Virus record (IMG/VR): IMGVR_UViG_3300033997_000478
Location: 1-64,000 of that record
Strand: one strand, 5' to 3'
Length of the DNA: 64,000 nt
The notes under the pieces were generated by a model. It was not told the origin of the DNA, searched no databases, and saw only the letters and a list, made by a program, of their open reading frames with translations. Shown here piece by piece: positions 5,572 to 60,863 of this stretch. Within the stretch, counting starts at the first letter, position 1; each line of letters starts with the position of its first letter. Made by a program: the position numbers and the translations under genes.

Positions 5572-6996
5572 ATGTCGCTGACCAAAACCTCCCTGGGCCT
5601 GGCCCACATGATCGCCAGCTCCCTGGCCGATCAGAACGTGGAACTGGGTACCGTGCCCAACACCAGTGTGGACGAGCTGACCCGCCTGTCCACCGGCGTG
5701 CTGGAGATGCAGGAAAGCATCCATCCGGCAGGCCGTGCCAACGTCACCATGCTGTCCATGGCTGACGCACTGGAAGCCGGCGCTTCGGCCACCACCGATG
5801 AAGAGCACTACCCGCACAGCGGCGCGATGGCACGCTTTGCCCAGAACGCCGGCCGTGTCCTGGCCTCGACCCTGGACCTGACCCAGAACAAGGTCACCCC
5901 GATGATCGGCCGTGTGGTCGAAGCCATCAACCAGACCGTGACTGAGCGCCTGCAAGGCATGGACTCCCCGCTGACCTTGGTCGAGCGTAAGGACGATCCG
6001 ATGCTGTCCTCGCATTACCTGCAGGAGAACGTGGCACGCTACGCCGGCTATCCGAGCGGCATGCGTCTGCGCAACTTCGGCCTGGGTGCATGCAGCTGGA
6101 ACCTGGCCGCCACCGGCCACTCGGGCATGGACAGCGAAGTGGCTGAGTTCACCAACCGCGTCGGTCAGGAAAAGATCAACTGGGTGTGCAACGCACTGTT
6201 CAACGGTGGCGCTGCCAACAGCTCGGAGATCTACGGCCTGGCTGATCAGTTCGAGAACTCGGTCATCGCCTACTTCCTGGCCATCCAGGGCCTGACCAAC
6301 GTTCCGGACGGCATCAACTGCTCGCTGGAAGAGTGGAACAGCTACTGCTCGCAGATCGTCAGCACCGCCGGTGCGGCCATCTCTTACGTGATGTCCCGTC
6401 GCGACAAGGTCAACTCCACCGGTCTGCTGGTCGTGAGCGCCCCGCTCAGCGGCGCCACCAGTGGCGTGATCGAAGTCAATGCTGCCCGCTACGCCGACTA
6501 CCTGGCTCAAGGCGGTACCGTCGAAGCGCTGTACGGCTCGTTCTACGAGCGCGGCAACTTCGAGCCGGGTTACCTGCTGGCCAACCAGGAACGGCTGACC
6601 AAGGACTGGGAGAACAGCCTGGCCCTGTGGAAGACCCAGCTGGTCGGTGCTCGCCTGGACGCCATGATCGCCGCCACCACTGCCGTGCTCACCGCCGAGA
6701 TCAACGCGATCCCGGAAGAAGAACTGGTCGGTTCGCGTGAAGCCTACCACGCTCGCCTGCGCGAGCGCATGGGTCATGCCAAGGCGCGCGACTTCGACAA
6801 CATGTGGCACTTCGCTCGCAAGGCGGTCTGCCGCGTGATCTTCCCGCACACCGACGCCGAAGTGCTGCTGCTGGGCGTTGAGCAGCAGGAGAAGATCTAT
6901 CCGGGTACTCCGGTGCGTGAGCTGGCCCTGCGTGCGGCCGTGGACCTGATGGGTGCATGGCTGGCTGAGCAGATCGTCACCACGGTCGTCAAGTAA
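5572..6996 (+). CDS. Probable virion structural protein (phiKZ gp177-like by position)
   Basis: 474 aa, strong codon bias, between the vRNAP gene and the protease; function inferred from synteny only. Confidence 0.6.
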   Translation: MSLTKTSLGLAHMIASSLADQNVELGTVPNTSVDELTRLSTGVLEMQESIHPAGRANVTMLSMADALEAGASATTDEEHYPHSGAMARFAQNAGRVLASTLDLTQNKVTPMIGRVVEAINQTVTERLQGMDSPLTLVERKDDPMLSSHYLQENVARYAGYPSGMRLRNFGLGACSWNLAATGHSGMDSEVAEFTNRVGQEKINWVCNALFNGGAANSSEIYGLADQFENSVIAYFLAIQGLTNVPDGINCSLEEWNSYCSQIVSTAGAAISYVMSRRDKVNSTGLLVVSAPLSGATSGVIEVNAARYADYLAQGGTVEALYGSFYERGNFEPGYLLANQERLTKDWENSLALWKTQLVGARLDAMIAATTAVLTAEINAIPEEELVGSREAYHARLRERMGHAKARDFDNMWHFARKAVCRVIFPHTDAEVLLLGVEQQEKIYPGTPVRELALRAAVDLMGAWLAEQIVTTVVK

Positions 6997-35172: not shown

Positions 35173-35973
35173 TTAGTTGTTTCCCCCCGTTAGGGTCCGC
35201 AGTGCTCTTTCGTAGCCCTTGCGATCGTCCATGAACATCACCTTTTGCCAGACTTCATCGATGTAGTCCAGATACATCTGGTTGGCGTCAGAGTAGCTGT
35301 CGATGATCTCGCGGTAACGACCCAGTTCCATACCACCGACCAGACGATTCATGCCGGTGGGGATGACCTGGTTGTTGTAGATGTAGGCCTTGGTTGCCAA
35401 CTCTACCAACTTGGAGAACGGGCGGTAGGTGGTCGGCTGGAGCGTGTTGAACTCGTCGTCGTATTCCAGATAGCAGCGCAGGAAGCAGGTGCGCGGCATC
35501 GACAGCACATCGCTGACCAGCAGGACGTTGTCACCGACCAGACGGATGTAGGCGGTGGAGACGATCGGGATACCCATCTGCGCATTCATCATGCCTTGGG
35601 CGGCATCGAGGATTTGCGAGTAGCCATTGACACCCATGTACGAGTTGTTCATCGTGTTGCTCGGACCGATGGTCAGCGAGACGACACGGGAGATCTTGCG
35701 GTTCTGGGTGAGGTTGGCCGGAATGCGGTAGATGTAGCGCGCGGTGTCGATTTGCTCAGCCGGCACGTTGTCCAGCGGGATCTCGATCATGTTGCCGCCG
35801 GCCAGATTGCAGTCGGGGATCACGCGCTCGTTGATCACCTTCTCCCGGATCATGGCATCCAGTGAAACCGGCATTGGAGTCCGGTTGAACTCCTTGCGGA
35901 TAAAGACCTCCTCAAGGATCTCTCGAGGAATGGCGAACTTGACGTCTTGGATCGCCTTTTGAAGAGCGCCCAT
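35173..35973 (-). CDS. Conserved jumbo-phage protein, probably virion structural
   Basis: 266 aa; N-terminal ALQKAIQDVKFAIPREILEEVF; divergent from the phuZ unit; TATG on the minus strand about 24 nt upstream. Confidence 0.6.
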   Translation of the reverse strand: MGALQKAIQDVKFAIPREILEEVFIRKEFNRTPMPVSLDAMIREKVINERVIPDCNLAGGNMIEIPLDNVPAEQIDTARYIYRIPANLTQNRKISRVVSLTIGPSNTMNNSYMGVNGYSQILDAAQGMMNAQMGIPIVSTAYIRLVGDNVLLVSDVLSMPRTCFLRCYLEYDDEFNTLQPTTYRPFSKLVELATKAYIYNNQVIPTGMNRLVGGMELGRYREIIDSYSDANQMYLDYIDEVWQKVMFMDDRKGYERALRTLTGGNN

Positions 35974-36623: not shown

Positions 36624-37607
36624 ATGAGTATCGAAGAGACCCCGCGCGGCAAGATCAGCCTGTACGGCGCCGGCGGCGCTGGCATCAACCTGGTCAGCAG
36701 CTGGAACGACGCGCACAACGACCACGCCACGGGGCAGGCTCTGCTGCAGGTGTCCTACGTGGACACCTCCAAGTCCAACCTCCCCGCCAGCGTCAATCCG
36801 GAAACCGTGTACGTGCTCGATGGCGTGGACGGCTCGGGCAAGATCCGCAGCGAGAACCACGTGGAAATCTCGCGCAACATCCGCAGCGTGCTGCAGAAGC
36901 ATGCGCCGGGTGACCTGAGCGTGGTGGTGTTCTCCGCCTCCGGCGGTTCTGGTTCGGTGTTCGGCCCGCTGCTGATCGCCGAACTGATCAGCACCGGCAA
37001 TCCGGTGGTGGGCGTGGTGGTGGGTTCGGAAGAATCCAAGATCACCACCGAGAACACCCTCAAGACCCTGAAGACCCTGGAACACATCGCCCAGTCCAAG
37101 GGCGTGCCGGTGGTCATCAGCTACCACCACAACAAGGCCGGCACCAAGCGCTCGGACAACGACAAGGCAGCCCGCCGCGTCATGGCCACCCTGAGCGTGC
37201 TGGCTTCGCGCCGCAACACGGCGTTGGACACCAAGGACATCGCCAACTGGCTCGAATACACCCGCGTGGCCCCGGCCATCAAGCCGCAGCTGTCGCTGCT
37301 GCACGTGTACGACCAGATCGACGACGTCCAGAATGCCACCCGGCCGATCTCCATCGCCGCGCTGCTGAAGGACCCGGACGAGCCGACCTTCGACGTGCCC
37401 TGCGAATACGAGACCACCGGCTACCCCAAGAACTGGCCGGACGGCTTCAACCAGCTGTTCTTCGTCATCAACGTCGATGGCGTGCCGGTCGTGGAGAAGA
37501 TGGTCAAGGACCGTCTGGAAGGTCTGGAGAAGGCCAGCGCTTCGCGCGTGACGCGTGACTCCATGGTCGACGGCAAGGACAACATCGTCGGCGACCTGAT
37601 CCTGTAA
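36624..37607 (+). CDS. phuZ: PhuZ phage tubulin
   Basis: YGAGGAGINL, VDTSKSN, DGSGKIRSEN and the tubulin signature SASGGSGS; acidic-hydrophobic C-terminal tail (DNIVGDLIL). Confidence 0.95.
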   Translation: MSIEETPRGKISLYGAGGAGINLVSSWNDAHNDHATGQALLQVSYVDTSKSNLPASVNPETVYVLDGVDGSGKIRSENHVEISRNIRSVLQKHAPGDLSVVVFSASGGSGSVFGPLLIAELISTGNPVVGVVVGSEESKITTENTLKTLKTLEHIAQSKGVPVVISYHHNKAGTKRSDNDKAARRVMATLSVLASRRNTALDTKDIANWLEYTRVAPAIKPQLSLLHVYDQIDDVQNATRPISIAALLKDPDEPTFDVPCEYETTGYPKNWPDGFNQLFFVINVDGVPVVEKMVKDRLEGLEKASASRVTRDSMVDGKDNIVGDLIL

Positions 37608-37651
37608 CCGACAACGCCCCCTCCCTTCGGGGAGGGGGTTATGGAACCCCC

Positions 37652-37846
37652 ATGAACGATACCTTTGTCTGCGACACCTGCGGCTGCATCGATCAACTCG
37701 AGCTGGCCGGAATCACCAACCCCTGCGGGAATCTCCAATGCACCCAATGCGCTTCCGGGACGTGGCACGATCTGTTTCCGAGGAGGCAGTACAATCCGAT
37801 CACCGATTTGGTCGTGAACCGACCCAACGGCATCGGGATCGGGTAG
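37652..37846 (+). CDS. Small zinc-ribbon-like protein
   Basis: CDTC...CTQC motifs in 64 aa. Confidence 0.6.
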   Translation: MNDTFVCDTCGCIDQLELAGITNPCGNLQCTQCASGTWHDLFPRRQYNPITDLVVNRPNGIGIG

Positions 37847-38313
37847 CCAACCAAAACCCGGCCATCACCATCCTCGTTCCGTGGGAGGACCCTGAGTTCT
37901 TCGACGAAGACGATCGACTGGCCTGCGATGAACTGACCATCGACCTCAACTACCTGTTCGTTGAGGCCGCAGGGTTCATGCCCTTGTTGGAGGTGGAGTA
38001 TCACTCCACCCAATTCATGGCCGTACTGGACATGAACTACAACGTGGTCTGGGATTGCCTGTGGAACATGTTCGAGGCGTGCGCCGACGACCAGCGGGTC
38101 ATGTCGCGCGATGCTTACATCGGACTGGCCGAACAGCACATCCACACACTGGTCCATACCACCGGCCGGATCATGGAGTGGATGGCGTGGCGGTGCAGTA
38201 ATTTCGCCGCTCCTCGTGAAGGTATGCATCCGCTCCACACGTACATCGACAATGCCGAATGGCGGCCGGGGGTGGGCGTATACATCTCCTTTGACTTCAG
38301 CGATGCGTATTAA
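37738..38313 (+). CDS. Array member 1 (hypothetical; start uncertain)
   Basis: Coding-like from about 37850 (ITILVPWEDPEF) to the stop at 38313. Confidence 0.65.
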   Translation: MHPMRFRDVARSVSEEAVQSDHRFGREPTQRHRDRVANQNPAITILVPWEDPEFFDEDDRLACDELTIDLNYLFVEAAGFMPLLEVEYHSTQFMAVLDMNYNVVWDCLWNMFEACADDQRVMSRDAYIGLAEQHIHTLVHTTGRIMEWMAWRCSNFAAPREGMHPLHTYIDNAEWRPGVGVYISFDFSDAY

Positions 38314-38324
38314 GGATAGTTGAA

Positions 38325-38747
38325 ATGAACCAACCCAAAGGCTTGACTGTCCATTTTGATCCGGCTGAGTTTGCTGGACCGCAGGACAGGCAGTTGCTGG
38401 AAAGCTTGAATCTGGCGATGGCTGATCTGGTCAACGTGGTACTCTGGGTGTGGCCTTCCTTCAAAGACGACCCCAGTCGCACCTATGAGGTGATCGTCGA
38501 TGAAATCGCCGAGATGGTGATGGGCGACGTCGAAGACCATCGGGCCACGGCGCTGTGCGAAGGAGCCGATCAGGTGGTAGATTTGTGCACCCGGATCTAC
38601 AGCCACCTAGAGCCGTCCATCAGGGACCTACCCGATCAGCTGTACGATGCAGTCAATAGCGGACTGCGCTCGGACCTGGACAGCGGAATCATGCATGTAC
38701 TGCGCGAGGTCCCGCAGGGCAAGATGCTGCTCTTGTCGATGGATTAA
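38325..38747 (+). CDS. Array member 2 (hypothetical)
   Basis: AAGGA RBS; 140 aa. Confidence 0.75.
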   Translation: MNQPKGLTVHFDPAEFAGPQDRQLLESLNLAMADLVNVVLWVWPSFKDDPSRTYEVIVDEIAEMVMGDVEDHRATALCEGADQVVDLCTRIYSHLEPSIRDLPDQLYDAVNSGLRSDLDSGIMHVLREVPQGKMLLLSMD

Positions 38748-38901
38748 CATACGGCCCGGCCTCGCCGGGCTTTATGCCGCTAAAAGCCCCTCAGACGCGT
38801 TCTGAGGCCCGTACGTTATTTGCCACACCGTTCCGTAATCTAGTGTATGGAAAGGCCGCCAAGGCGCGCCTGTTGGCCTTCCCTTCAAAGAGACATTTTC
38901 C

Positions 38902-39294
38902 ATGAACCCTCAGACGCGCCAATATCCGAGTAAGTTCGTGCTCTCAATAGCCAATATCGAGACCGAACTGATGGCTTTGACCGAAGCCACAATGCAGCAG
39001 ATGGGCCGCAACAAAGATGACGAACCATTCCGCGATCAACTGATCCGGGCGTGGGTGGTGCATCAGTTGCAGCGTGAGCTGTATCTGACCTTCGATCGAG
39101 ATCGCACGTACAACGAAGCACAGACCATGTTCTTCGAGACCCCGCCGTCGTACTTCAACACCCACCGACACCTGATTGATCAGTTTGTCGGCCAAGTCCG
39201 CCCCGTGCTGAGCGTGGGACCGGACATCCCTTACAACGAGCGCATCTGTACGGTGGAGTTCTGGCTCCCCAACCTGACGCTCAAGTTCCTATAA
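38902..39294 (+). CDS. Array member 3 (hypothetical)
   Basis: 130 aa ORF in the run. Confidence 0.72.
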   Translation: MNPQTRQYPSKFVLSIANIETELMALTEATMQQMGRNKDDEPFRDQLIRAWVVHQLQRELYLTFDRDRTYNEAQTMFFETPPSYFNTHRHLIDQFVGQVRPVLSVGPDIPYNERICTVEFWLPNLTLKFL

Positions 39295-39302
39295 AGAGAA
39301 AA

Positions 39303-40025
39303 GTGACCGCCATGGCAAATCTGCCTGAAAGTAAGTACTTCATCATCTCCATCGCCGAGGAGGTGGATGTGCTGATGATGAGTATCGAGGAAATGGCGGC
39401 AGGCATGTTCGACAACAACCCTCTGCGCCAGCAGTTGCTGCCGGCAGTATCGGAGGAGACGAAGGGGTTCAACCCCGTGACGTGCGCAGAGCTGGCCAAA
39501 GCGTACTACCTGAACTGTCTGCAGGAAACCGCCCTGTGGATGGAAAAGGCCGGTACCAAACAGGACTACGTGGTGGACCAGCTGGGGGTGATGATCCCGA
39601 TGTGGAATGATGTCGATTCCAAGACGCAAGATGACATCGTCCGTTTTGTTGAGGCAGCCTTTGCCGAAACGGCCAACGACAATCTGGTGCTGTTCGATGG
39701 CCCAGATCCGAATTGGCGTGTGTGGGCCGCACGCACGCTCAGCACCAATGCACTGGTGTTGGAGAATGTGGGCGACTTCCGCATTCTGGATTGGGAGCGC
39801 CGAATGGGCCTGACCGAACAGGCCGAGAAGGACGGCGTGGAAGTTTCCGAAGATGCGTGGGATGTGGATGAGGATATGCGTACCTTCGCCCAGCTCAACA
39901 GCATCCGGGCCAGCAAGTCGACCTCGGTCCGGTTGTATGCGGTGGATGTACTGGATCATCGCAAGGCCAAGGCTCAAGGTCGCGGTAGCAGGATCGTCGC
40001 CCGTGCAGTCCGCCACGACCTCTAA
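39303..40025 (+). CDS. Array member 4 (hypothetical, C-terminally extended)
   Basis: 240 aa; an alternative ATG lies at 39312. Confidence 0.75.
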   Translation: MTAMANLPESKYFIISIAEEVDVLMMSIEEMAAGMFDNNPLRQQLLPAVSEETKGFNPVTCAELAKAYYLNCLQETALWMEKAGTKQDYVVDQLGVMIPMWNDVDSKTQDDIVRFVEAAFAETANDNLVLFDGPDPNWRVWAARTLSTNALVLENVGDFRILDWERRMGLTEQAEKDGVEVSEDAWDVDEDMRTFAQLNSIRASKSTSVRLYAVDVLDHRKAKAQGRGSRIVARAVRHDL

Positions 40026-40038
40026 ACTACCCCCCTCG

Positions 40039-40500
40039 TTGCGACAGACCAATGCGCAACGTCGCTTCAACCCCAAACCACGGCACATCATCGTCGACCT
40101 GAAATGGTTCGGCGAACGGATCGAGACCACCATTGAGCATTACTTGGGAACGGCCTCGTTCGTGGACTACTCCGTGTTGGCAGACTTCATCGCTGGCGGG
40201 CTGGAACAGATTTTTTACGGGGCAGCATTTACTGGTGAGGCCACGCTGGAAGGTCTGTTGGCTGAGTACCGAGTTCCCCGTGACGTAGCCCGTCAATTGC
40301 TCGATGAATTGGACATCGCAGTCCAGCGGTATTTCGACCAGGAGTTCGGTGGTCGAGATTCAGCCAACGAATACAACTTCCGCCTACTCTCGGCCAATAC
40401 GGTGATCCTCACCGAAAGCCAGCCGGTTCCAGAGTTTCGGAAGGGCTACCTACTTACGGAGTCACCGCATGACCTTTACATCGAGGTACCAACTCTCTGA
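40039..40500 (+). CDS. Array member 5 (hypothetical; start uncertain)
   Basis: In-frame TTG at 40039; HIIVDLKWF ... YNFRLLSANTVIL. Confidence 0.65.
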   Translation: MRQTNAQRRFNPKPRHIIVDLKWFGERIETTIEHYLGTASFVDYSVLADFIAGGLEQIFYGAAFTGEATLEGLLAEYRVPRDVARQLLDELDIAVQRYFDQEFGGRDSANEYNFRLLSANTVILTESQPVPEFRKGYLLTESPHDLYIEVPTL

Positions 40501-40984
40501 TCACGAGGATGACCGCGCGGTCGACTACACCAACGTGATCATCCCCATCGAAGATGTGTGGCATGAGCTCTATCAAGATTACCGACTCTTCTCACATCTG
40601 GAGTTGGACCCAAGCGAAGTGATCAAAGCGGCCATCGCCTACGCAATCGCTGGCACCCGCACTGATGACAGTCCGTTGGTCTTCACCAACGCCTTCGCTC
40701 GTGTCAACGCCCACATGCAGGCCTATCAGCTGATCGTCGACCGGGCGCAGTATCCGGACGAGGTGATGCAAGAGGGAGCTTCGCATCTAGACGTCCATCG
40801 GTTGGTGGACATTATCGGTAAGGTCGCTTATCGTCTGACCGAGGCACTGCTGCTCAACCTTGGCACTGTGCCACTGCAAACCCGTCTTCACCGATTCCTC
40901 GGCCGAGACATCATTCTTCTGATACCAACCGAGGTACACCGTGGGCATGAACGTAATCTTGCCCGTTCGAATTCCCGACTCTGA
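40469..40984 (+). CDS. Array member 6 (hypothetical)
   Basis: Overlaps its neighbours; VIIPIE ... RLHRFLGRDIILL. Confidence 0.72.
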   Translation: MTFTSRYQLSDHEDDRAVDYTNVIIPIEDVWHELYQDYRLFSHLELDPSEVIKAAIAYAIAGTRTDDSPLVFTNAFARVNAHMQAYQLIVDRAQYPDEVMQEGASHLDVHRLVDIIGKVAYRLTEALLLNLGTVPLQTRLHRFLGRDIILLIPTEVHRGHERNLARSNSRL

Positions 40985-41369
40985 TCGAGTTGCGGTAGAA
41001 CGGGCCATGGAAGCATGCCGGAACAAGCTGGACTTCACCGACTTTCTGATGCTCGCCTTCGAGTATTGGGATCTGGGCGATGACGGCCAGTATTCCGGGA
41101 TGCAGGACGACGCTCTCCGAGATGTCTTGCGCGGCCACCTGAACAAGGTGCTGCCTAAGATCGTCCATACTTACGCCCAGCTGGAACAGCTGACGGCGTT
41201 GGTGATGCACGCAGTGACGGTATTCCGTACCGCCGCTTACACTTCACTGGGCCCCATCGTGGAGTCCCTCAACGCACCGGTGACGATGTACTTCGTGCGC
41301 TATTTGGCACAAGACGTCATGGTGCGGATCGAACCGGAATGGGAGGCTACGTCTCATGAGCAGGAATGA
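40941..41369 (+). CDS. Array member 7 (hypothetical)
   Basis: VILPVR ... YFVRYLAQDVMVR. Confidence 0.72.
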   Translation: MGMNVILPVRIPDSDRVAVERAMEACRNKLDFTDFLMLAFEYWDLGDDGQYSGMQDDALRDVLRGHLNKVLPKIVHTYAQLEQLTALVMHAVTVFRTAAYTSLGPIVESLNAPVTMYFVRYLAQDVMVRIEPEWEATSHEQE

Positions 41370-41835
41370 ACGAGACCGCGCCTACCTGGTCTTCAATGGC
41401 CGGGAGATCATCGGTGAGATCAAGCCGTCCTCGACCTTGCTGGAAACCCTGGAGCTCACCCCGCGTACGGTCGTGCGTGAGATCTTGGAGGTGGTGTTTA
41501 GCGCCAACAAGTACCAGCATATCCAGCCGCCGATTGCCGCAGCCCACATCCCCGGTGCTGGCCAGTTGATCCGCGCCACCTACGCAGTGCAGGAGATGAT
41601 CGAATCCAACTGGATGGAGCAGCTGGAAGAGACCTCTGAGATCGCCCGCCGAGCTCGGGAGGACATAGCCGCCCTGCGTCAGCTGTTGTATTCGATCTGG
41701 ACTCTGATCAGTGATGAGCTGATCTATCTGATTGAAGCCTTCAAGCTCAGTGACGCTGAGATCCGCGATCTGCGTTTTGAACGCTGGATCGATGAGGACT
41801 TCATCGTGTCCATTCCATCCCGCCGGAGGAAGTAA
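41356..41835 (+). CDS. Array member 8 (hypothetical)
   Basis: GGAGG RBS; YLVFNGRE ... LRFERWIDEDFIVS. Confidence 0.75.
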   Translation: MSRNERDRAYLVFNGREIIGEIKPSSTLLETLELTPRTVVREILEVVFSANKYQHIQPPIAAAHIPGAGQLIRATYAVQEMIESNWMEQLEETSEIARRAREDIAALRQLLYSIWTLISDELIYLIEAFKLSDAEIRDLRFERWIDEDFIVSIPSRRRK

Positions 41836-42350
41836 TGCAGAAACCCAAGACGATCGCCCGCTACGGGCAGATCAGGCCGGCCAGGCTGATCTTGGACCCG
41901 CAACTGAGTGACGAGCAGATCATCGCCCTGAATCAGTTCACCTACGAATGCGATGCCACGTTGACGGGCACGGCGAAAGCGCCGGTGTGGATGATGGTGG
42001 CACAAGGCATTTTGGATGTGGTGTGTCGCCATGAACGCGACCATGTCACTGCCGTGGACACAGCAGCAATGCTGGGCAGTCAACCCAAGCCCGCACGACC
42101 GCAGGTCGACCCCAGCGAGTTGTGTGATCACGTCTATGGCTTGTTCGAGTCATTGCCGATTCCGATGCTCAATGCCGAACGGGTCTACGACGAACCGATG
42201 CGTACGTTGCTGGTCCATCTGTACGAAGCAATGCAGCAGTACGTCCCGCAGCTGCTCGGTACTTCGATGTGGTCTCGTTTCGAGAACTTCATCCAAGTCG
42301 AACGTTTCGGCTCGCGTATGCTGGAGCTGCACTTTACGAGGCCGGTGTGA
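41835..42350 (+). CDS. Array member 9 (hypothetical)
   Basis: TAATG coupling; RLILDP ... IQVERFGSRMLEL. Confidence 0.75.
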   Translation: MQKPKTIARYGQIRPARLILDPQLSDEQIIALNQFTYECDATLTGTAKAPVWMMVAQGILDVVCRHERDHVTAVDTAAMLGSQPKPARPQVDPSELCDHVYGLFESLPIPMLNAERVYDEPMRTLLVHLYEAMQQYVPQLLGTSMWSRFENFIQVERFGSRMLELHFTRPV

Positions 42351-42727
42351 GTTACTCACTCCCGACTCGGGTGGTCCTCTCCGGCCGCGAGGCCGGAGTG
42401 CGACCGCAATCCTTGATTAACGGCATGATCCAGCGCCCCATGGACCTCAATGCCTACGGCGACATGATGGTCCAGATGATGCGGGCAGTGCACGACAACT
42501 GGTCAATTGCCCAGCGCTCAGAACTGGCGATGTATTTCCTGCGTGGCTTCGAATTGAAGGACGTGGAAGACCCCGGCTTTGACCAACGCATCATGTTGGA
42601 AGCGGTCAACTTCGGTGCACTGATGTTCCTTGAGAACTGGCGCGCAGCAGTGCCGAGCTGGGTACCTCTGAACCAGTACCATTTCGATCGCTGGATTGGC
42701 TGGGACTTGGTCCTGGTCAGGCAGTAA
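42347..42727 (+). CDS. Array member 10 (hypothetical)
   Basis: GTGA coupling; RVVLSGRE ... YHFDRWIGWDLVLV. Confidence 0.72.
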   Translation: MSYSLPTRVVLSGREAGVRPQSLINGMIQRPMDLNAYGDMMVQMMRAVHDNWSIAQRSELAMYFLRGFELKDVEDPGFDQRIMLEAVNFGALMFLENWRAAVPSWVPLNQYHFDRWIGWDLVLVRQ

Positions 42728-42761: not shown

Positions 42762-43169
42762 ATGCTCAATCAATCTGACATCGTCCTGGGCACGACCGTC
42801 ACTTTCGATCTGTACCCGTTTGCCCTGTTCGGCACGACCATCAAGAATGCGAAGGTCCTCTCGCTGCTCGATGGTCAAACCGCCCAGGTGCTAGGCTACG
42901 ACCCCCGTAGCCTGCATGTACAGGTCTACCCGACCCTGCCGCCCGGTACGCCCGACGGCTTTGACAAGTACTTCTACCTCCAGGTGCTGCTGCCCTCCGG
43001 TCAGCGCGCCGTCTACGGCCTGCCGTGGATCAAGAGCGAGACGTACAAGACTGAAGTGATGCGCGACATCATGATCCGCTTGAACGGGGTCACCCCGGAC
43101 AAGGAAAATCAGATCCGTCGCGCCCTGGCCAACATCGACCAGCCGATCACTTCGCTTGATGTAGTGTGA
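42762..43169 (+). CDS. Conserved jumbo-phage protein upstream of the DNA polymerase (gp49-like by position)
   Basis: 135 aa, beta-rich; VTFDLYP ... VYGLPWIK. Confidence 0.65.
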   Translation: MLNQSDIVLGTTVTFDLYPFALFGTTIKNAKVLSLLDGQTAQVLGYDPRSLHVQVYPTLPPGTPDGFDKYFYLQVLLPSGQRAVYGLPWIKSETYKTEVMRDIMIRLNGVTPDKENQIRRALANIDQPITSLDVV

Positions 43170-43322: not shown

Positions 43323-43360
43323 GGGAGGTCCCGTTTGGGGCCTCCCTTCTTTTTATGCCG
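43323..43360 (+). terminator. Hairpin followed by a U-tract and TTATGCCG
   Basis: GGGAGGTCCC-GTTT-GGGGCCTCCC-TTCTTTTTATGCCG. Confidence 0.75.
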
Positions 43361-43422
43361 TTTAGGTGTGATTTGCTTTTTTATCAGCGAGTATAATGGA
43401 GTAGGTAGGAAGTGGATAGAAC

Positions 43423-45642
43423 ATGCATCATTTCGTAAATCCGGCTGACACGTACGTCCGCAAAGTCGACATTCGACGCACGTATGTCGAGGACACAGCG
43501 CGTTACCTGTCGCTGATGACCAAGCAGCCCTATGACTACTGCTTGAATTTCGTATCAACCCTGGTCGGCCCCGGCGGCACCATGGAGATGAAAGACCCGG
43601 AAGTCATGGTGCTACGCCGTGGCGAGAACGGGGACCGCGAGAAGATCTTCACCACGTTCGGGGGATTCCTGCAATCGGTGTATTCCGAGAACCAGATGCT
43701 GTCCCCGTCGATGACCGCTTATATCCACCCGGACAAGCAGAAGTCGATCCTGGCTCTGTACATTGACGGCAACTTGCAGCTTCGTAAAGAGGCCAAGCAT
43801 GAGATGTTCGTCGCCCAGATGGCCGGTGATGAGATCAAGCGCAAGATCCAGAACTCCAAGCAGACCACGTTCAAGATCAAGAACAACTCGCTGTCGGGCG
43901 CGCACAGCTCGCCGTACACGATCCTGTGGAATAAGTCCAGCCACTCCACGCTGACCTCCACCTGCCGTGTTGCCGTGTCCTACGGCAACACCAACAACGA
44001 GAAGTTCCTGTACGGTAACCGGCATTACTGGTGCCCGGACGTGGCCCGCAATAACATCATCTCCATCATCAACCACACCGATCTGGAGAAGGTCGCTGCG
44101 GTAATGACCAAGTACGGCCTGAAGGCGCCCAGCGTGGAGCTGGTGATGTCGTTGCTGGAACGCTCCACGGAGAACTACTGGCGCAGTACCGAGGAAATGG
44201 CCCGCCTGCGACTGCTGGTGGAGGCACTGGACGATACCCAGCGTTCGGCCTTCGCCTACGTCTCAGATCTGTACCACCTGTCGCTGGGTAACGATGAGTT
44301 CGTTCGCGAGTTCTTCCGTCGCATGTCCAAGCATGACCTTGAACCCATCACCGATATGGACGAGGCCGACAAGTGGACCAGCAAGAAGATGATGGACGAC
44401 AACCTGCTGGCCTTCGTTGGCATGTTGTGCTCGGAAGAGCTGGGTGGCGGTACGCTCAATAACGTCCACGGCGATAACACCAACCTGAAGCTGAAGGACG
44501 TTCGTCCCAAGGACTATGGCGTGTTCGCAGCCACGGTGCGCAACGTCCATGAAACGCTGGACTACTACGAAGATTTCATCCGTGCATTCTGGGTCACCCC
44601 CAACCTGCCGGCTTCGGTCTTCCAAGCGCCGAGCATCATCCGTCGTGGCGCCATTGCCTCGGATACCGACTCGACCATCTTCACCGTGCAGCACTGGACC
44701 ATGTGGTATCGTGGCCAGCTGGACTTCACCAAGGAGTCTGAGGACGTCGCATCGACTGCGGTGTATCTGGCCGGTCAGCTGATCCGTCACGTTCTGGCAA
44801 CCACCTCCGGTGCAATGGGTGTGGCCAAGCAGTTCGTTAACAAGCTGTCGATGAAGAACGAGTTCTACTTCAAGGTGTTCTTCTTGACCTCCCGTGCCAA
44901 GCACTACTACGCCTATCAGGCAGCACAGGAAGGTAACGTCTTTAAGAAGATGAAGAAGGAGATCAAGGGTGTTGCACTGCGCAACTCCAACATCCCGCCT
45001 TCAATCACCAAGAAGTCCAACGCGCTGCTGACCTACGTGATGGATTCGGCACTGCGACTGGAAGAGATCGATCCGCGTCGTCTGCTGCGTTACGTGGCCA
45101 AGGTGGAAGATTCCATCCGTTCTGAAGTGTACCGTGGTTCTTACGACCTGCTGGCAACGGTGGGTATCAAGGCACCTGATGCGTACAAGAAGGGCGAGGA
45201 CACCCCGGCTTATCAGCACTACCTGATGTGGGAGGAGGTCTTTGCCACCACCTACGGTCATGCCCCGCCACCGCCCTACGGTGCGGTCAAGGTTCCGGTC
45301 AAGCTCGAGAAGAAGATCGAGATGAAGGAATGGCTGGACAACATGGAAGACCAAGTGATCGCAGATAAGTTGCGCGCTTGGAATGCCAACACAAAGGGCA
45401 CGATGGCTGTCATGTACCTGCCCGAGCAGGTGTTGGGTATGACAGGTATCCCCAAGGAAATCATCGCCGCGGTGGACATCCGTCCGCTGATTGCGCAGAT
45501 GATGGAAGCGTTCTACCTGATCCTTGAGTCGGTGGGCCTTTTCATGAAGAACGCAGACAACACCCGTCTGGTCTCCGATGAAAAGTGGCTGCTGCGTGAG
45601 GACTGGCCGCTTCCGGAACTGGACATCGACCATTTGGGTTAA
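43423..45642 (+). CDS. Family B DNA polymerase, polymerase domain (phiKZ gp50-like)
   Basis: KIKNNSLSGA (motif B-like) and ASDTDSTIF (motif C); no exonuclease domain, consistent with the split polymerase of phiKZ-like phages. Confidence 0.9.
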   Translation: MHHFVNPADTYVRKVDIRRTYVEDTARYLSLMTKQPYDYCLNFVSTLVGPGGTMEMKDPEVMVLRRGENGDREKIFTTFGGFLQSVYSENQMLSPSMTAYIHPDKQKSILALYIDGNLQLRKEAKHEMFVAQMAGDEIKRKIQNSKQTTFKIKNNSLSGAHSSPYTILWNKSSHSTLTSTCRVAVSYGNTNNEKFLYGNRHYWCPDVARNNIISIINHTDLEKVAAVMTKYGLKAPSVELVMSLLERSTENYWRSTEEMARLRLLVEALDDTQRSAFAYVSDLYHLSLGNDEFVREFFRRMSKHDLEPITDMDEADKWTSKKMMDDNLLAFVGMLCSEELGGGTLNNVHGDNTNLKLKDVRPKDYGVFAATVRNVHETLDYYEDFIRAFWVTPNLPASVFQAPSIIRRGAIASDTDSTIFTVQHWTMWYRGQLDFTKESEDVASTAVYLAGQLIRHVLATTSGAMGVAKQFVNKLSMKNEFYFKVFFLTSRAKHYYAYQAAQEGNVFKKMKKEIKGVALRNSNIPPSITKKSNALLTYVMDSALRLEEIDPRRLLRYVAKVEDSIRSEVYRGSYDLLATVGIKAPDAYKKGEDTPAYQHYLMWEEVFATTYGHAPPPPYGAVKVPVKLEKKIEMKEWLDNMEDQVIADKLRAWNANTKGTMAVMYLPEQVLGMTGIPKEIIAAVDIRPLIAQMMEAFYLILESVGLFMKNADNTRLVSDEKWLLREDWPLPELDIDHLG

Positions 45643-59390: not shown

Positions 59391-60863
59391 ATGAAAATTG
59401 TCAAAGTTCTGTTCATGGAAATTGGCGCAAATGACCAGATGTATCTGCGCCCGTTTCAGGCAAACGTGGATGGCGAGGAACTGAACCACCTGCAGGAAGT
59501 CACCCGCAACGGCAAGAACCTGACACCGGCCGCGCTCAGTGGCGTGGGTGCTGACATCATGCGTCCTTCGGCCACGATCTCCAATCCGGTGGACGTGGTG
59601 GGCGGTCTGAACAACGGCCGTCTGGTGTTCATGATGGAAGTGGAATGGCCGGCGCAAGCGGGTCTGGTCACGGTGGAGTACCTCACCGGTTACACCGACT
59701 ACGTCGGCGTCAACGCCACCTTCGGTCGCAACACCTACGACCCGAACATGCGGCTGTACTTCAACAACGTGATCCGCGGTAGCCGTCGTCGCGATCGCAG
59801 CGGCTTTGCTTCCCGCTCCACGGTGCACGTGCAGGATTCCCACCAGATCATCTCCGGTGAGTACCAGCCGGACATCACCAACCTGCACAACGTCCCGCAC
59901 CTGATGCGCCCGCAGGACGTGTTCACCAACGTCTCCATGGCCGAATGCCGGAACCTGATCTCCGGCGACGTCTACGACACCCGCTCCACCCACGGCCCGG
60001 ACAAGCTGCAGGTCAGCGACCGTCGCAACAACATCCCCGGCACCTACCTGTCGCGCCTGCTGACCACGTGGAACGATCACAGCGATCGTGATCACCACGA
60101 CGAGGCGACCATGTACAGCTCGATGGCCTCGGTGGTTGCAGAACCGTCGATCATCAAGCTGCGCACGATCTCCAAGCTGTCCACCATGACCGACCTGCGT
60201 CGCGGTGGTTCGGTCACCTGGGGCGAGCTGAAGGAAGCCGATGAAGTGGGCATGCTCGAAGCCCGCACCACGGCGGCACTGGCGCTCTCCAATGCCACCC
60301 GCAGTCAGCTCAGCCATGTCGGCCAGGGTCAGCACTGGCGCGGTAATGATCACCACACGATCATCGCCACCAGCGTCGCCCAAGCAGTTCCGGGCATCAT
60401 GGCGCAGCTGCTGTTGACCATGGCGCAGTTCACGGCCACCAACATGACCTTGGACGGCAGCTGGATCGTCAACATGATCGACTGGGAGTCCTTCAACGAC
60501 GACCAGGACATGGTGATCGAGCAGGTCAAGCTGTTCCAGCAGCGCATGATCACTGATCTGCTGTTGGGTGTTTCGGCAGGCAACCTGATGCCGATGGCCC
60601 TGACCTGCACGTTCGATGTCATGTCCCAGACCAGCATCGAAGTGGACTTCGACGGCGAAGCTGTACCGTTCTTCGCCCCGAGCTTCTGCGACGGCCTGTT
60701 CTCCAACATCCGCGCACCCGGCACCAACGCTTTGGACGATCTGGCTACCAACATCCAGAAGCTGATGCTCTCCATGCATCAGGACAACTCGGCCAAGCAC
60801 ACCGCCTACGAACCAATCGAAATGGGAAATTTCCGTAATGATCAAGCCAACCACTCTCTTTGA
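59391..60863 (+). CDS. picA: Probable PicA/Imp1 nuclear import factor (phiKZ gp69-like)
   Basis: 490 aa directly after the gp68-like gene; YLRPFQAN, YLTGYTDY and MRLYFNNV motifs; assignment rests largely on synteny. Confidence 0.65.
   Translation: MKIVKVLFMEIGANDQMYLRPFQANVDGEELNHLQEVTRNGKNLTPAALSGVGADIMRPSATISNPVDVVGGLNNGRLVFMMEVEWPAQAGLVTVEYLTGYTDYVGVNATFGRNTYDPNMRLYFNNVIRGSRRRDRSGFASRSTVHVQDSHQIISGEYQPDITNLHNVPHLMRPQDVFTNVSMAECRNLISGDVYDTRSTHGPDKLQVSDRRNNIPGTYLSRLLTTWNDHSDRDHHDEATMYSSMASVVAEPSIIKLRTISKLSTMTDLRRGGSVTWGELKEADEVGMLEARTTAALALSNATRSQLSHVGQGQHWRGNDHHTIIATSVAQAVPGIMAQLLLTMAQFTATNMTLDGSWIVNMIDWESFNDDQDMVIEQVKLFQQRMITDLLLGVSAGNLMPMALTCTFDVMSQTSIEVDFDGEAVPFFAPSFCDGLFSNIRAPGTNALDDLATNIQKLMLSMHQDNSAKHTAYEPIEMGNFRNDQANHSL

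What the first reader, a model, noticed from the sequence alone, without database searches (positions are those of the whole stretch)
37738..42727. Tandem array of about 10 highly divergent, apparently paralogous genes between phuZ and the DNA polymerase
Seen: ten consecutive, often translationally coupled ORFs, mostly 125-190 aa (one 240 aa), with little overall identity but a shared layout. Each has an N-terminal hydrophobic beta-strand (ITILVP, LTVHFD, FVLSIA, FIISIA, HIIVDL, VIIPIE, VILPVR, YLVFNG, RLILDP, RVVLSG), then a helical core, then a C-terminal beta-hairpin. The hairpin is clearest in members 6-10 (RLHRFLGRDIILL, YFVRYLAQDVMVR, LRFERWIDEDFIVS, IQVERFGSRMLEL, YHFDRWIGWDLVLV) and weaker in 1-5 (e.g. 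YNFRLLSANTVIL, VLREVPQGKMLLL). Inference: one fold has been duplicated and diversified into a hetero-oligomer or a set of specificity adaptors, placed between the spindle and replication genes. As I recall (unverified), some phiKZ genes just upstream of its polymerase were hit in nuclear-import (imp) screens, so these could be cargo adaptors for the phage nucleus. I know of no description of the block as one family.
Basis: partly seen in the sequence, partly recalled or inferred. Interest (0 to 1): 0.78.

Follow-up and report, generated by a model that had tools for sequence, protein, structure and literature searches.

The report
Tandem Imp2-like gene family in jumbo phage
Between the tubulin and DNA polymerase genes of this nucleus-forming jumbo phage lies a row of ten real, fast-evolving small genes; most are diverged copies of one phage-specific fold, and that fold also resembles phiKZ Imp2, a factor needed to bring a specific protein into the phage nucleus.

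Summary
The ten ORFs are real genes. Five close relatives keep the same ten-gene layout, and dN/dS is 0.02-0.4.

Evidence for paralogy, member by member:
- Members 6, 7, 8 and 10 are linked by profile-profile comparison of independent ortholog clusters (12 real pairs at E<1e-4, 0 reversed decoys).
- Member 1 matches member 2 (E 3e-7), and member 2 joins members 6-8 at E about 1e-4 to 1e-3.
- Member 9 has no sequence link, but its AlphaFold model has the same topology as member 8: an N-terminal strand, a helical core and a C-terminal hairpin. It shares 20 of its top 50 BFVD neighbours with member 8.
- Member 4, and probably member 5, correspond to the two halves of phiKZ gp43 and are only weakly tied to the family.
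- Member 3 is unlinked.

The fold has no match in PDB, Pfam or PHROGs. Its structural neighbours are almost all chimallivirus proteins, including four Imp2 (phiKZ gp47) orthologues.

A role as cargo-specific nuclear-import adaptors is inferred, not shown. The one complex prediction gave no answer.

The parts
36624..37607 (+). PhuZ tubulin; upstream boundary of the block
   Evidence: 53-57% identical to the tubulin of Xanthomonas phages RTH11 and LucasX. Pfam Tubulin/TubZ_C on the orthologues.
37617..37638 (+). GC-rich stem-loop just after the PhuZ stop codon
   Evidence: Perfect inverted repeat, kept in five relatives; it remains a stem-loop in L098 despite a substitution. Its function was not tested.
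37652..37846 (+). 64-aa zinc-ribbon ORF (two CxxC pairs). It lies in the block but is not a family member.
   Evidence: Conserved at 39-59% identity in RTH11, LucasX, L011, L004 and L005. Variation is concentrated at third codon positions in the non-overlapped part.
37738..38313 (+). Member 1. The start is uncertain; the region homologous to the family begins near 37861.
   Evidence: Its family profile matches the member-2 family at 93% probability, E 3.1e-7, over 103 columns. dN/dS is 0.02-0.29. The ORF overlaps the zinc-ribbon ORF by 109 nt.
38325..38747 (+). Member 2
   Evidence: hhalign against the member 6, 7 and 8 families gives E 1.5e-4 to 9e-4, against a best reversed decoy of 4.7e-4 in the same screen. 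The member-8 model hits a 146-aa LucasX protein, the length of the member-2 orthologue, at probability 0.95.
38754..38770 (+). Terminator-like hairpin (6-bp GC stem followed by TTTAT) at the start of the conserved 154-nt gap between members 2 and 3
   Evidence: The gap is nearly invariant in relatives whose flanking genes are only 61-82% identical.
38902..39294 (+). Member 3; an ORFan of this phage clade whose family membership is unproven
   Evidence: Orthologues were found only in the window's clade, RTH11 and LucasX. The best profile hit to any other cluster is E 6.8e-3 over 24 columns. dN/dS is 0.13-0.18.
39303..40025 (+). Member 4; homologue of the N-terminal half of phiKZ gp43
   Evidence: hhalign gives 99.9%, E 7e-35. 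Independent clusters give E 1.8e-8. Against the N-half of gp43 alone, E is 5.7e-10.
40003..40500 (+). Member 5 (alternative start at 40039); probably the C-terminal half of gp43
   Evidence: Weak collinear match to gp43 residues about 160-340, E 3.5e-3 to 1e-2, ending in a shared GDY(L/Y)P motif. Weak links to member 4 (E 2.9e-4) and to family cluster c3 (E 8.5e-4).
40469..40984 (+). Member 6
   Evidence: Independent-cluster hhalign to the member-8 family gives 88%, E 3.1e-6, over 141 columns. Recruited full-length by the member-8 profile with no decoys recruited.
40947..41369 (+). Member 7
   Evidence: hhalign to family cluster c15 gives E 3.4e-5 and to member 6 gives E 2.1e-4, both full length.
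41356..41835 (+). Member 8; the family representative that was modelled
   Evidence: AlphaFold2 model with pLDDT 81.8 and pTM 0.73. Strand 8-14, helices, hairpin 140-145/148-154. BFVD neighbours are almost all chimallivirus proteins.
41835..42350 (+). Member 9; fold-level member and the most variable gene of the block
   Evidence: Model with pLDDT 72.5 and pTM 0.72, with the same order of elements. It shares 20 of its top 50 BFVD hits with member 8. No sequence link. It is 74% identical in L094, where its neighbours are 97-100% identical.
42347..42727 (+). Member 10 (126-aa form)
   Evidence: hhalign to cluster c3 gives E 4.3e-7 over 132 columns and to the member-8 family gives E 1.9e-5. Gene calls in relatives give 126 aa.
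42762..43169 (+). SH3DP-domain gene, homologue of phiKZ gp49; not a family member; the conserved end of the block
   Evidence: Found in 71 loci. Pfam PF20287 on the orthologues. No profile link to any of the ten.
43323..43346 (+). Intrinsic-terminator-like hairpin (10 pairs, T-run) between the block and the polymerase gene
   Evidence: Conserved, with compensatory changes, in RTH11 and LucasX. LucasX annotates a terminator at the same place.
43423..45642 (+). DNA polymerase (divDNApol); downstream boundary
   Evidence: 61-66% identical to RTH11, LucasX and L011. Pfam PF20286 on the orthologues.
59391..60863 (+). Homologue of phiKZ gp69 (Imp1/PicA), the proposed partner of the family
   Evidence: E 7e-42, 29% identity over residues 17-534 of gp69.

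Best explanation
The block is an operon-like row of small proteins specific to nucleus-forming (chimallivirus) jumbo phages. Most of them descend by tandem duplication from one domain. That domain has an N-terminal beta-strand, a core of four or five helices and a C-terminal beta-hairpin, which in the models would pack with the first strand into a small three-stranded sheet.

The copies diverge so fast that only profiles and structure models still connect them.

The same fold is predicted for phiKZ Imp2 (gp47), which sits at the syntenic place. Genetics has shown that Imp2 is needed for import of one cargo (Nlp1) into the phage nucleus, and that Imp2 is itself imported through a dedicated surface of Imp1.

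The most likely working model is as follows. Each paralogue is a cargo-specific adaptor or licensing factor. It binds one client protein, or a few, with its variable helical surface, and it presents the client to the Imp1/PicA importer at the ChmA shell. Duplication and divergence then widen or retune the import repertoire.

What is shown: the genes are real, six or seven of the ten are related, and the fold is specific to chimalliviruses. What is inferred: membership of Imp2 in the fold family, and the adaptor function.
For: Genes are real:
- The same ten-gene layout occurs in five relatives.
- dN/dS is 0.02-0.4.

Paralogy:
- A profile seeded on member 8 recruits members 6, 7 and 10 full-length, and 2-4 copies per locus in 44 loci, with no reversed decoy recruited in 15 rounds.
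- Between non-overlapping clusters there are 12 pairs at E<1e-4 against 0 decoys, and 27 against 1 at E<1e-3. One connected component holds members 2, 6, 7, 8 and 10.
- Member 1 matches member 2 at E 3e-7.
- Across the whole 324-kb genome (1281 ORFs), the family HMMs hit only ORFs of this block.

Fold:
- The member 8 and member 9 models share their topology.
- Nearly all named BFVD neighbours are phiKZ-like phages.

Link to Imp2:
- SL2 A0A2D1GRC6 belongs to the 90% cluster of phiKZ gp47. Member 8 hits it at probability 0.90, TM 0.46/0.43.
- The Imp2 orthologues of 201phi2-1, PS119XW and Phabio are also hit, at probability 0.60-0.82.
- Member 9 hits PhiPA3 gp044, at probability 0.35.

Synteny and published genetics: imp2 is orf47 and imp4 is orf48, both described as adaptors, and Imp2 is imported via Imp1.

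An Imp1 homologue is encoded in the window.
Against: - No sequence-level link exists between the family and Imp2, Imp4, gp45 or gp46. The best hhalign E is 0.03, and an alignment search of 5.8 billion proteins returned only close Imp2 relatives.
- All TM scores to Imp2 are below 0.5, and both sides of each comparison are predictions.
- Member 3 has no link at all. Members 4 and 5 are only weakly linked, and they correspond to a conserved protein (gp43) whose function I could not find in the papers searched.
- The complex prediction with the Imp1 homologue gave no answer.
- No localisation or expression data exist for this phage. The RNA-library contigs do not prove transcription.
- Fast divergence and variable copy number would also fit a role at the phage-host interface.
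Confidence: 0.45

Rival explanations
1. The family consists of fast-evolving host-interaction proteins (host takeover or counter-defence). They would bind variable host targets rather than serve import, and the arms race would drive the divergence, the copy-number change and the allele replacement.
For: - The members diverge far faster than their neighbours. In L098, members 1, 2, 6 and 9 are 56-66% identical, against 91-93% for PhuZ and the polymerase.
- Detectable copy number per locus varies from 1 to 5.
- Member 9 looks exchanged between otherwise near-identical genomes: 74% identity and dS 0.68 in L094. Contigs from other samples also break inside it.
- There is no homology to any known function.
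Against: - dN/dS is 0.02-0.4, with no sign of positive selection at whole-gene level.
- The block keeps a fixed position inside a core replication and nucleus gene neighbourhood in all lineages examined. Counter-defence genes usually sit in accessory regions.
- The phiKZ genes at the same positions (orf47, orf48) lack disruptive transposon insertions and have import phenotypes.
Confidence: 0.2
2. The proteins are stoichiometric subunits of one hetero-oligomeric machine tied to replication, the spindle or the nuclear shell. Examples would be a polymerase accessory complex or a shell-associated assembly. They would not be independent adaptors.
For: - The genes are translationally coupled, with overlapping stops and starts. 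This favours equimolar synthesis.
- They appear to be co-transcribed between PhuZ and a strong terminator just before the polymerase gene.
- An exposed small beta-sheet could pair between copies. This is an inference from the models.
Against: - Copy number differs between lineages, which is awkward for a fixed complex.
- In phiKZ, imp2 and imp4 mutants affect different cargos, which argues for separate action.
- No interaction between members was tested successfully. One search scored only the Imp1 homologue and gave no answer.
Confidence: 0.15
3. There is no single ten-member family. Only members 1, 2, 6, 7, 8 and 10 are related. Members 3, 4, 5 and 9 are unrelated small proteins that happen to share a common strand-helices-hairpin pattern.
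For: - Members 3 and 9 have no profile link better than the decoys.
- The two halves of gp43 do not match each other (E 0.2), and their links to the family are at E 1e-3 or worse.
- The BFVD hits of member 9 have TM 0.2-0.4 and a best E of 8e-3.
Against: - Member 9's model has the same order of elements as member 8's, and 20 of its 50 nearest BFVD structures are shared with member 8, out of the whole BFVD library.
- The member-8 model hits a 147-aa LucasX protein, the length of the member-5 orthologue, at probability 0.92. It also hits PhiPA3 gp039, the gp43 homologue.
- The links between member 5 and cluster c3 and between members 5 and 4 (E 3e-4 to 9e-4) lie where decoys are rare: 1 decoy against 27 real pairs.
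Confidence: 0.2

Closest known systems
phiKZ Imp2 (gp47 / orf47) and its PhiPA3 homologue gp044
   Same: - Same genomic place, between the gp43 homologue and gp49/polymerase.
- Similar core size, about 170 aa.
- Same order of elements in the alignment: an N-terminal hydrophobic strand (including a strand-D-I/V-W motif like that of member 6) and a C-terminal hairpin.
- Structural hits from the member 8 and member 9 models.
- No Pfam family.
   Different: - No detectable sequence similarity.
- TM scores are below 0.5.
- Many Imp2 orthologues carry a C-terminal extension of about 100 aa that is absent here.
- The import phenotype is known only for phiKZ and PhiPA3.
phiKZ Imp4 (gp48 / orf48)
   Same: It is the gene immediately upstream of the gp49 homologue, as member 10 is here. 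It is of similar size (127 vs 126 aa).
   Different: No sequence link was found. gp48 links only to the PhiPA3 gp045 group (E 1.2e-6 over 29 columns). Its fold was not compared, and it is not among the listed BFVD hits.
phiKZ gp43 (PhiPA3 gp039, 201phi2-1 gp75)
   Same: Member 4 is a clear homologue of its N-terminal half, including the D-Y-R-I-x-D/E-W/Y motif. Member 5 follows member 4 directly and matches the C-terminal half weakly and collinearly.
   Different: Here it is two genes rather than one 357-aa protein. Member 4 also carries a clade-specific basic tail. I found nothing on the function of gp43 in the papers searched.
Imp1 / PicA (phiKZ gp69)
   Same: It is the proposed partner, and a homologue is encoded at 59391-60863. 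More than 1300 homologue clusters exist in metagenomes.
   Different: It is an unrelated protein of about 490 aa and not part of the array. Binding to the array members is not established.

Membership tests
Member-8-like superfamily defined in this report | Full-length profile-profile similarity between non-overlapping ortholog clusters at E<1e-4, a level that no reversed-alignment decoy reached | tested here: met
   Members 6, 7, 8 and 10 form one component with clusters c3, c10 and c15. There are 12 real pairs against 0 decoys. The decoy-controlled iterative search agrees.
Member-8-like superfamily defined in this report | The same test applied to members 1 and 2 | tested here: met
   Member 1 vs member 2: E 3.1e-7 over 103 columns. 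Member 2 vs members 6, 7 and 8: E 1.5e-4 to 9e-4, a range with 27 real pairs against 1 decoy. This support is weaker than for members 6-8 and 10.
Member-8-like superfamily defined in this report | Sequence-profile link for member 9 | tested here: not met
   The best real hit (E 7e-3) is hardly better than the best decoys (E 0.035).
Member-8-like superfamily defined in this report | Fold of member 9: N-terminal strand, helical core, C-terminal hairpin, and shared structural neighbours | tested here: met
   Model at pLDDT 72.5 with the same order of elements as member 8. It shares 20 of its top 50 BFVD hits with member 8. TM scores are low (0.2-0.4), so the support is moderate.
Member-8-like superfamily defined in this report | Any profile link for member 3 | tested here: not met
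   Best E is 6.8e-3 over 24 columns. The ESM Atlas holds no model of it.
Member-8-like superfamily defined in this report | Profile or fold link for members 4 and 5 | tested here: inconclusive
   Member 5 vs c3: E 8.5e-4. Member 5 vs member 4: E 2.9e-4. Member 4 vs c10: E 1.3e-3. The member-8 model hits a 147-aa LucasX protein at probability 0.92 but TM 0.33, and PhiPA3 gp039 at probability 0.54.
Imp2 (phiKZ gp47) family | Detectable sequence homology to gp47 or PhiPA3 gp044 | tested here: not met
   The best hhalign E is 0.03 to any cluster. A search with a 16-sequence alignment returned only 15 close relatives.
Imp2 (phiKZ gp47) family | Shared three-dimensional fold | tested here: inconclusive
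   Four Imp2 orthologues lie among member 8's best 25 BFVD hits, at probability 0.60-0.90 and TM by query 0.34-0.46. Member 9 hits PhiPA3 gp044 at probability 0.35. All TM scores are below 0.5, and both sides are predicted models.
Imp2 (phiKZ gp47) family | Position in the PhuZ-to-polymerase block, upstream of the gp49 homologue | tested here: met
   Family members always lie 0.5-5.8 kb upstream of the polymerase gene.
Imp2 (phiKZ gp47) family | Required for nuclear import of a specific cargo, and itself imported through Imp1 | not testable with these tools
   The published genetics cover only phiKZ and PhiPA3. The complex prediction with the Imp1 homologue returned 'no answer'.
Imp4 (phiKZ gp48) family | Sequence homology to gp48 or PhiPA3 gp045 | tested here: not met
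   gp48 links only to cluster c5, the PhiPA3 gp045 group. Neither links to the window's families. The fold was not compared.
phiKZ gp43 family | Sequence homology to gp43 | tested here: met
   Member 4 matches at E 7e-35, E 1.8e-8 between independent clusters and E 5.7e-10 to the N-half. Member 5 vs the C-half gives only E 3.5e-3 to 1e-2 and is inconclusive.

The most novel reading that the evidence does not exclude
The whole PhuZ-to-polymerase block of Chimalliviridae would be the phage's adaptor locus. Under this reading, the ten genes here and phiKZ gp43-gp48 (including Imp2 and Imp4) all descend from one ancestral import-adaptor domain. Each paralogue licenses a different cargo through its own surface on Imp1. 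Turnover of copies, such as the exchanged member-9 allele, retunes which phage and host proteins may enter the nucleus. This would be a viral counterpart of the diversified karyopherin/adaptor families of eukaryotes.
Probability: 0.2. Interest if true: 0.85.

Novelty: new variant of a known kind. Interest (0 to 1): 0.63.

Why it matters
The published work describes Imp2, Imp4 and Imp5 as cargo-specific adaptors that, by sequence, are conserved only in Pseudomonas phiKZ-like phages.

If the fold-level link holds, such adaptors are not a Pseudomonas-phage peculiarity. They would belong to a multi-copy family present at one fixed locus in many nucleus-forming phages.

Three consequences would follow:
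- It would give a simple rule for finding candidate import adaptors in any chimallivirus: look just upstream of the gp49/polymerase genes.
- It would explain why sequence searches failed.
- It would make the question of how the phage nucleus chooses its cargo testable in other hosts.

The family also has no counterpart in PDB, Pfam or PHROGs, so it is a candidate new fold.

Tried and rejected
- Pfam and PHROGs scans of the ten proteins found nothing above chance. The same was true for 43 family members and for 16 Imp2 orthologues.
- Pairwise BLAST between members detected only orthologues in other phages, not paralogues.
- Shallow 3-4-sequence profiles gave only E about 3e-4. I therefore fetched 80 more loci.
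- ESM Atlas searches did not help. Member 9's Atlas model is poor (pLDDT 0.41), member 3 has no model, and the shape search with the member-8 model found nothing above TM 0.42.
- PDB sequence searches returned only designed helical repeats for the family profile and nothing for Imp2.
- PDB fold searches found nothing.
- I tried to bridge Imp2 to the family with a deeper Imp2 alignment. No remote hits came back.
- I tested for an internal duplication in gp43. The N and C halves do not match.
- I looked for a shared promoter-like motif in the two conserved intergenic gaps. It is not enriched in the window (4 matches against 2.9 expected).
- RNA-library contigs were laid on the block. Depth is low, several of the runs are probably DNA, and transcription is not shown.
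- The four-chain complex prediction with the Imp1 homologue returned 'no answer'. The score stayed high when member 9 was replaced, so it cannot be assigned to a chain.
- I checked the Avs5 activator JADA as a possible relative. It is gp316 and unrelated to this block.

Full report
WHAT THE WINDOW IS. The window comes from a 324-kb jumbo phage genome with direct terminal repeats. Its nearest annotated relatives are Xanthomonas phages RTH11 and LucasX, whose tubulins are 53-57% identical to the window's PhuZ and whose polymerases are 65-66% identical. The neighbourhood is typical of Chimalliviridae. It holds PhuZ (36624-37607) and a divergent family-B DNA polymerase (43423-45642). Orthologous contigs continue with chimallin and an RNA polymerase subunit. 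An Imp1/PicA homologue lies at 59391-60863. Near-identical DNA occurs in subsurface, soil, fermentation, indoor and wastewater samples.

THE OBSERVATION. The ten ORFs exist as described. They are co-directional and mostly overlap or abut. Five close relatives recovered from public assemblies have exactly the same ten genes, with the same lengths. RTH11, LucasX and a 252-kb metagenome contig (L011) have the positional orthologues at 20-40% identity.

Against the close relatives every gene shows dN/dS of 0.02-0.4, so all ten are coding and under purifying selection. They evolve much faster than their neighbours. In L098, members 1, 2, 6 and 9 are 56-66% identical, against 93% for PhuZ and 91% for the polymerase.

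Some starts need correction. Member 10 is most likely the 126-aa form starting at 42347, member 5 starts at 40003 or 40039, and member 7 starts at 40947. The long ORF of member 1 overlaps it by 109 nt.

ARE THEY PARALOGUES? Pairwise BLAST sees nothing between members. Profiles do.

I fetched 80 further loci holding the polymerase and 10 kb upstream of it and pooled every plus-strand ORF of that region. An iterative HMM search seeded with the member-8 orthologues recruited members 6, 7 and 10 over their full length. It also recruited one to four consecutive genes in 44 loci. No reversed-sequence decoy was recruited in 15 rounds.

To avoid circularity I clustered the pool at E<1e-6 into ortholog groups that share no sequences. 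I then compared 42 groups all against all with hhalign, together with reversed alignments as decoys. There were 12 real pairs at E<1e-4 against 0 decoys, and 27 against 1 at E<1e-3. The best decoy scored E 4.7e-4.

At E<1e-4, members 6, 7, 8 and 10 form one component with three clusters from other lineages. At E<1e-3, member 2 joins that component. With deeper alignments, member 1 matches member 2 at 93% probability, E 3.1e-7, over 103 columns.

In the whole genome (1281 ORFs in six frames), the family HMMs hit only ORFs of this block. This includes HMMs built purely from other phages.

Member 4 is a clear homologue of the N-terminal half of phiKZ gp43. Member 5 follows it and matches the C-terminal half weakly but collinearly, ending in the same GDY(L/Y)P motif. 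So members 4 and 5 look like a split gp43. Their links to the family are borderline, at E 3e-4 to 1.3e-3. Members 3 and 9 have no sequence link. Orthologues of members 1, 3 and 9 were found only in the window's clade, RTH11 and LucasX, and for members 1 and 9 also in L011.

STRUCTURE. Only two structure jobs were available.

Member 8 was modelled with a 43-sequence family alignment. The model has pLDDT 81.8 and pTM 0.73. It shows a strand at residues 8-14, five main helices and a hairpin at 140-145/148-154.

Member 9 was modelled with 11 homologues gathered for the purpose. The model has pLDDT 72.5 and pTM 0.72 and shows the same order of elements.

For member 8, Foldseek against BFVD returned almost only proteins of phiKZ-like jumbo phages. 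The best hits have the lengths of the LucasX orthologues and paralogues:
- 153 aa, E 4e-7
- 129 aa, E 9e-4
- 146 aa, probability 0.95
- 147 aa, probability 0.92
- 122 aa, probability 0.96
Their assignment to LucasX genes rests on length and accession series only.

Member 9's hits are weaker (best E 8e-3), but 20 of its top 50 are also in member 8's top 50.

LINK TO THE IMPORT FACTORS. In phiKZ, PhuZ is gp39 and the polymerase is gp50. Escape mutants of an imported nuclease fusion mapped to orf47 (imp2) and orf48 (imp4). These genes are described as cargo-specific factors, conserved by sequence only in Pseudomonas phages, and Imp2 is itself imported in an Imp1-dependent way. Later work calls them adaptors, and a transposon screen found no disruptive insertions in them.

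gp47 and gp48 lie directly before gp49, whose homologue here is the SH3DP gene at 42762-43169. That places them at the positions of members 9 and 10.

By sequence I could not connect Imp2, Imp4, gp45 or gp46 to the family. By structure, member 8 hits SL2 A0A2D1GRC6 at probability 0.90 and TM 0.46/0.43. An exact look-up places that protein in the 90% cluster of phiKZ gp47. Member 8 also hits the Imp2 orthologues of 201phi2-1 (276 aa), PS119XW and Phabio at probability 0.60-0.82. Member 9 hits PhiPA3 gp044, the homologue in which escape mutations were also found.

The Imp2 alignment shows the same N-terminal strand and C-terminal hairpin. It also shows a strand-D-I/V-W motif like that of member 6 and its RTH11 orthologue. 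I consider Imp2's membership of the fold family likely but not proven.

MECHANISM. The best-supported model is a set of cargo-specific adaptors, or licensed clients, of the Imp1 importer. This rests on the fold-level and positional link to Imp2 and on published genetics. It does not rest on any test in this phage.

A four-chain prediction (Imp1 homologue with members 8, 9 and 10) scored 0.42-0.51, against 0.00 when the Imp1 homologue was replaced by unrelated proteins. It also scored 0.57 when member 9 was replaced. The tool's verdict is 'no answer', and I do not count the job as evidence either way.

DISTRIBUTION AND DYNAMICS. PhuZ lies 3.2-9.8 kb upstream of the polymerase in 58 of the loci. 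Sequence-detectable family copies number 1-5 per locus in 41 of 72 loci, always 0.5-5.8 kb upstream of the polymerase. None is detectable by sequence in the phiKZ, PhiPA3 and 201phi2-1 groups.

Member 9 is a hot spot. In L094 it is 74% identical with dS 0.68, while its neighbours are 97-100% identical. Contigs from other samples break or diverge inside it. This points to allele replacement.

TRANSCRIPTION SIGNALS. A strong terminator-like hairpin at 43323-43346 separates the block from the polymerase gene. It is conserved with compensatory changes. The 154-nt gap between members 2 and 3 is more conserved than the flanking genes and begins with a terminator-like hairpin at 38754-38770. Members 1-2 and members 3-10 may therefore be separate transcription units.

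VERDICT. The family is specific to nucleus-forming phages and is not in the libraries I searched. The proposed link to nuclear import is plausible and now concretely testable, but it remains inferred.

Noticed in passing
window 37652-37846 (+), overlapping 37738-37846: A conserved 64-aa zinc-ribbon ORF (two CxxC pairs) follows PhuZ. Gene callers skipped it in the five close relatives, but LucasX annotates it. The long ORF of member 1 starts at an ATG formed by the Q-C codons of the second CxxC motif, and it is open in the -1 frame across the 3' end of the zinc-ribbon ORF in all four lineages. There is no canonical start codon between the zinc-ribbon stop and member 1's first beta-strand. The real start of member 1 is therefore unresolved: it could be overlapping genes, an unusual start codon or a frameshift fusion.
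   Followed up: partly
window 37617-37638: A perfect GC-rich stem-loop lies directly after the PhuZ stop codon. It is kept in all five close relatives and remains a stem-loop in L098 despite a substitution. It has no T-run, so it may be a stability or attenuation element rather than a terminator.
   Followed up: no
window 38748-38901: The 154-nt gap between members 2 and 3 is almost invariant in relatives whose flanking genes are 61-82% identical. It holds three hairpins, the first terminator-like (38754-38770, followed by TTTAT). Parts are recognisable in RTH11 and LucasX. A motif it shares with the gap before the polymerase gene was not enriched in the window.
   Followed up: partly
window 41835-42350; L094 6697-7212: Member 9 is 74% identical (dS 0.68) in a relative whose neighbouring genes are 97-100% identical. 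Contigs from two other samples skip or diverge inside it. This suggests allele replacement by recombination at this one gene.
   Followed up: partly
window 35173-35973 (-): The DUF7484 gene, the homologue of phiKZ gp42, lies upstream of PhuZ here. In phiKZ and PhiPA3 it lies inside the PhuZ-to-polymerase block. The block has therefore been rearranged between lineages.
   Followed up: no
L002 (LucasX) about 6105-6602: LucasX has an unannotated ORF in the 360-nt gap between LUCX_50 and LUCX_51. It is the orthologue of member 6 (E 1.4e-59 to the family profile).
   Followed up: partly
window 59391-60863 (+): This is the Imp1/PicA homologue. A search of 1.84 billion representative proteins found 1312 clusters of homologues (E<=1e-3), which shows how diverse nucleus-forming phages are in metagenomes.
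   Followed up: no
window 43347-43422: Downstream of the terminator before the polymerase gene lies a conserved T-run followed by a TATAAT-like element (GAGTATAATGG). It may be the polymerase promoter. The sigma-70-type scan did not flag it.
   Followed up: no
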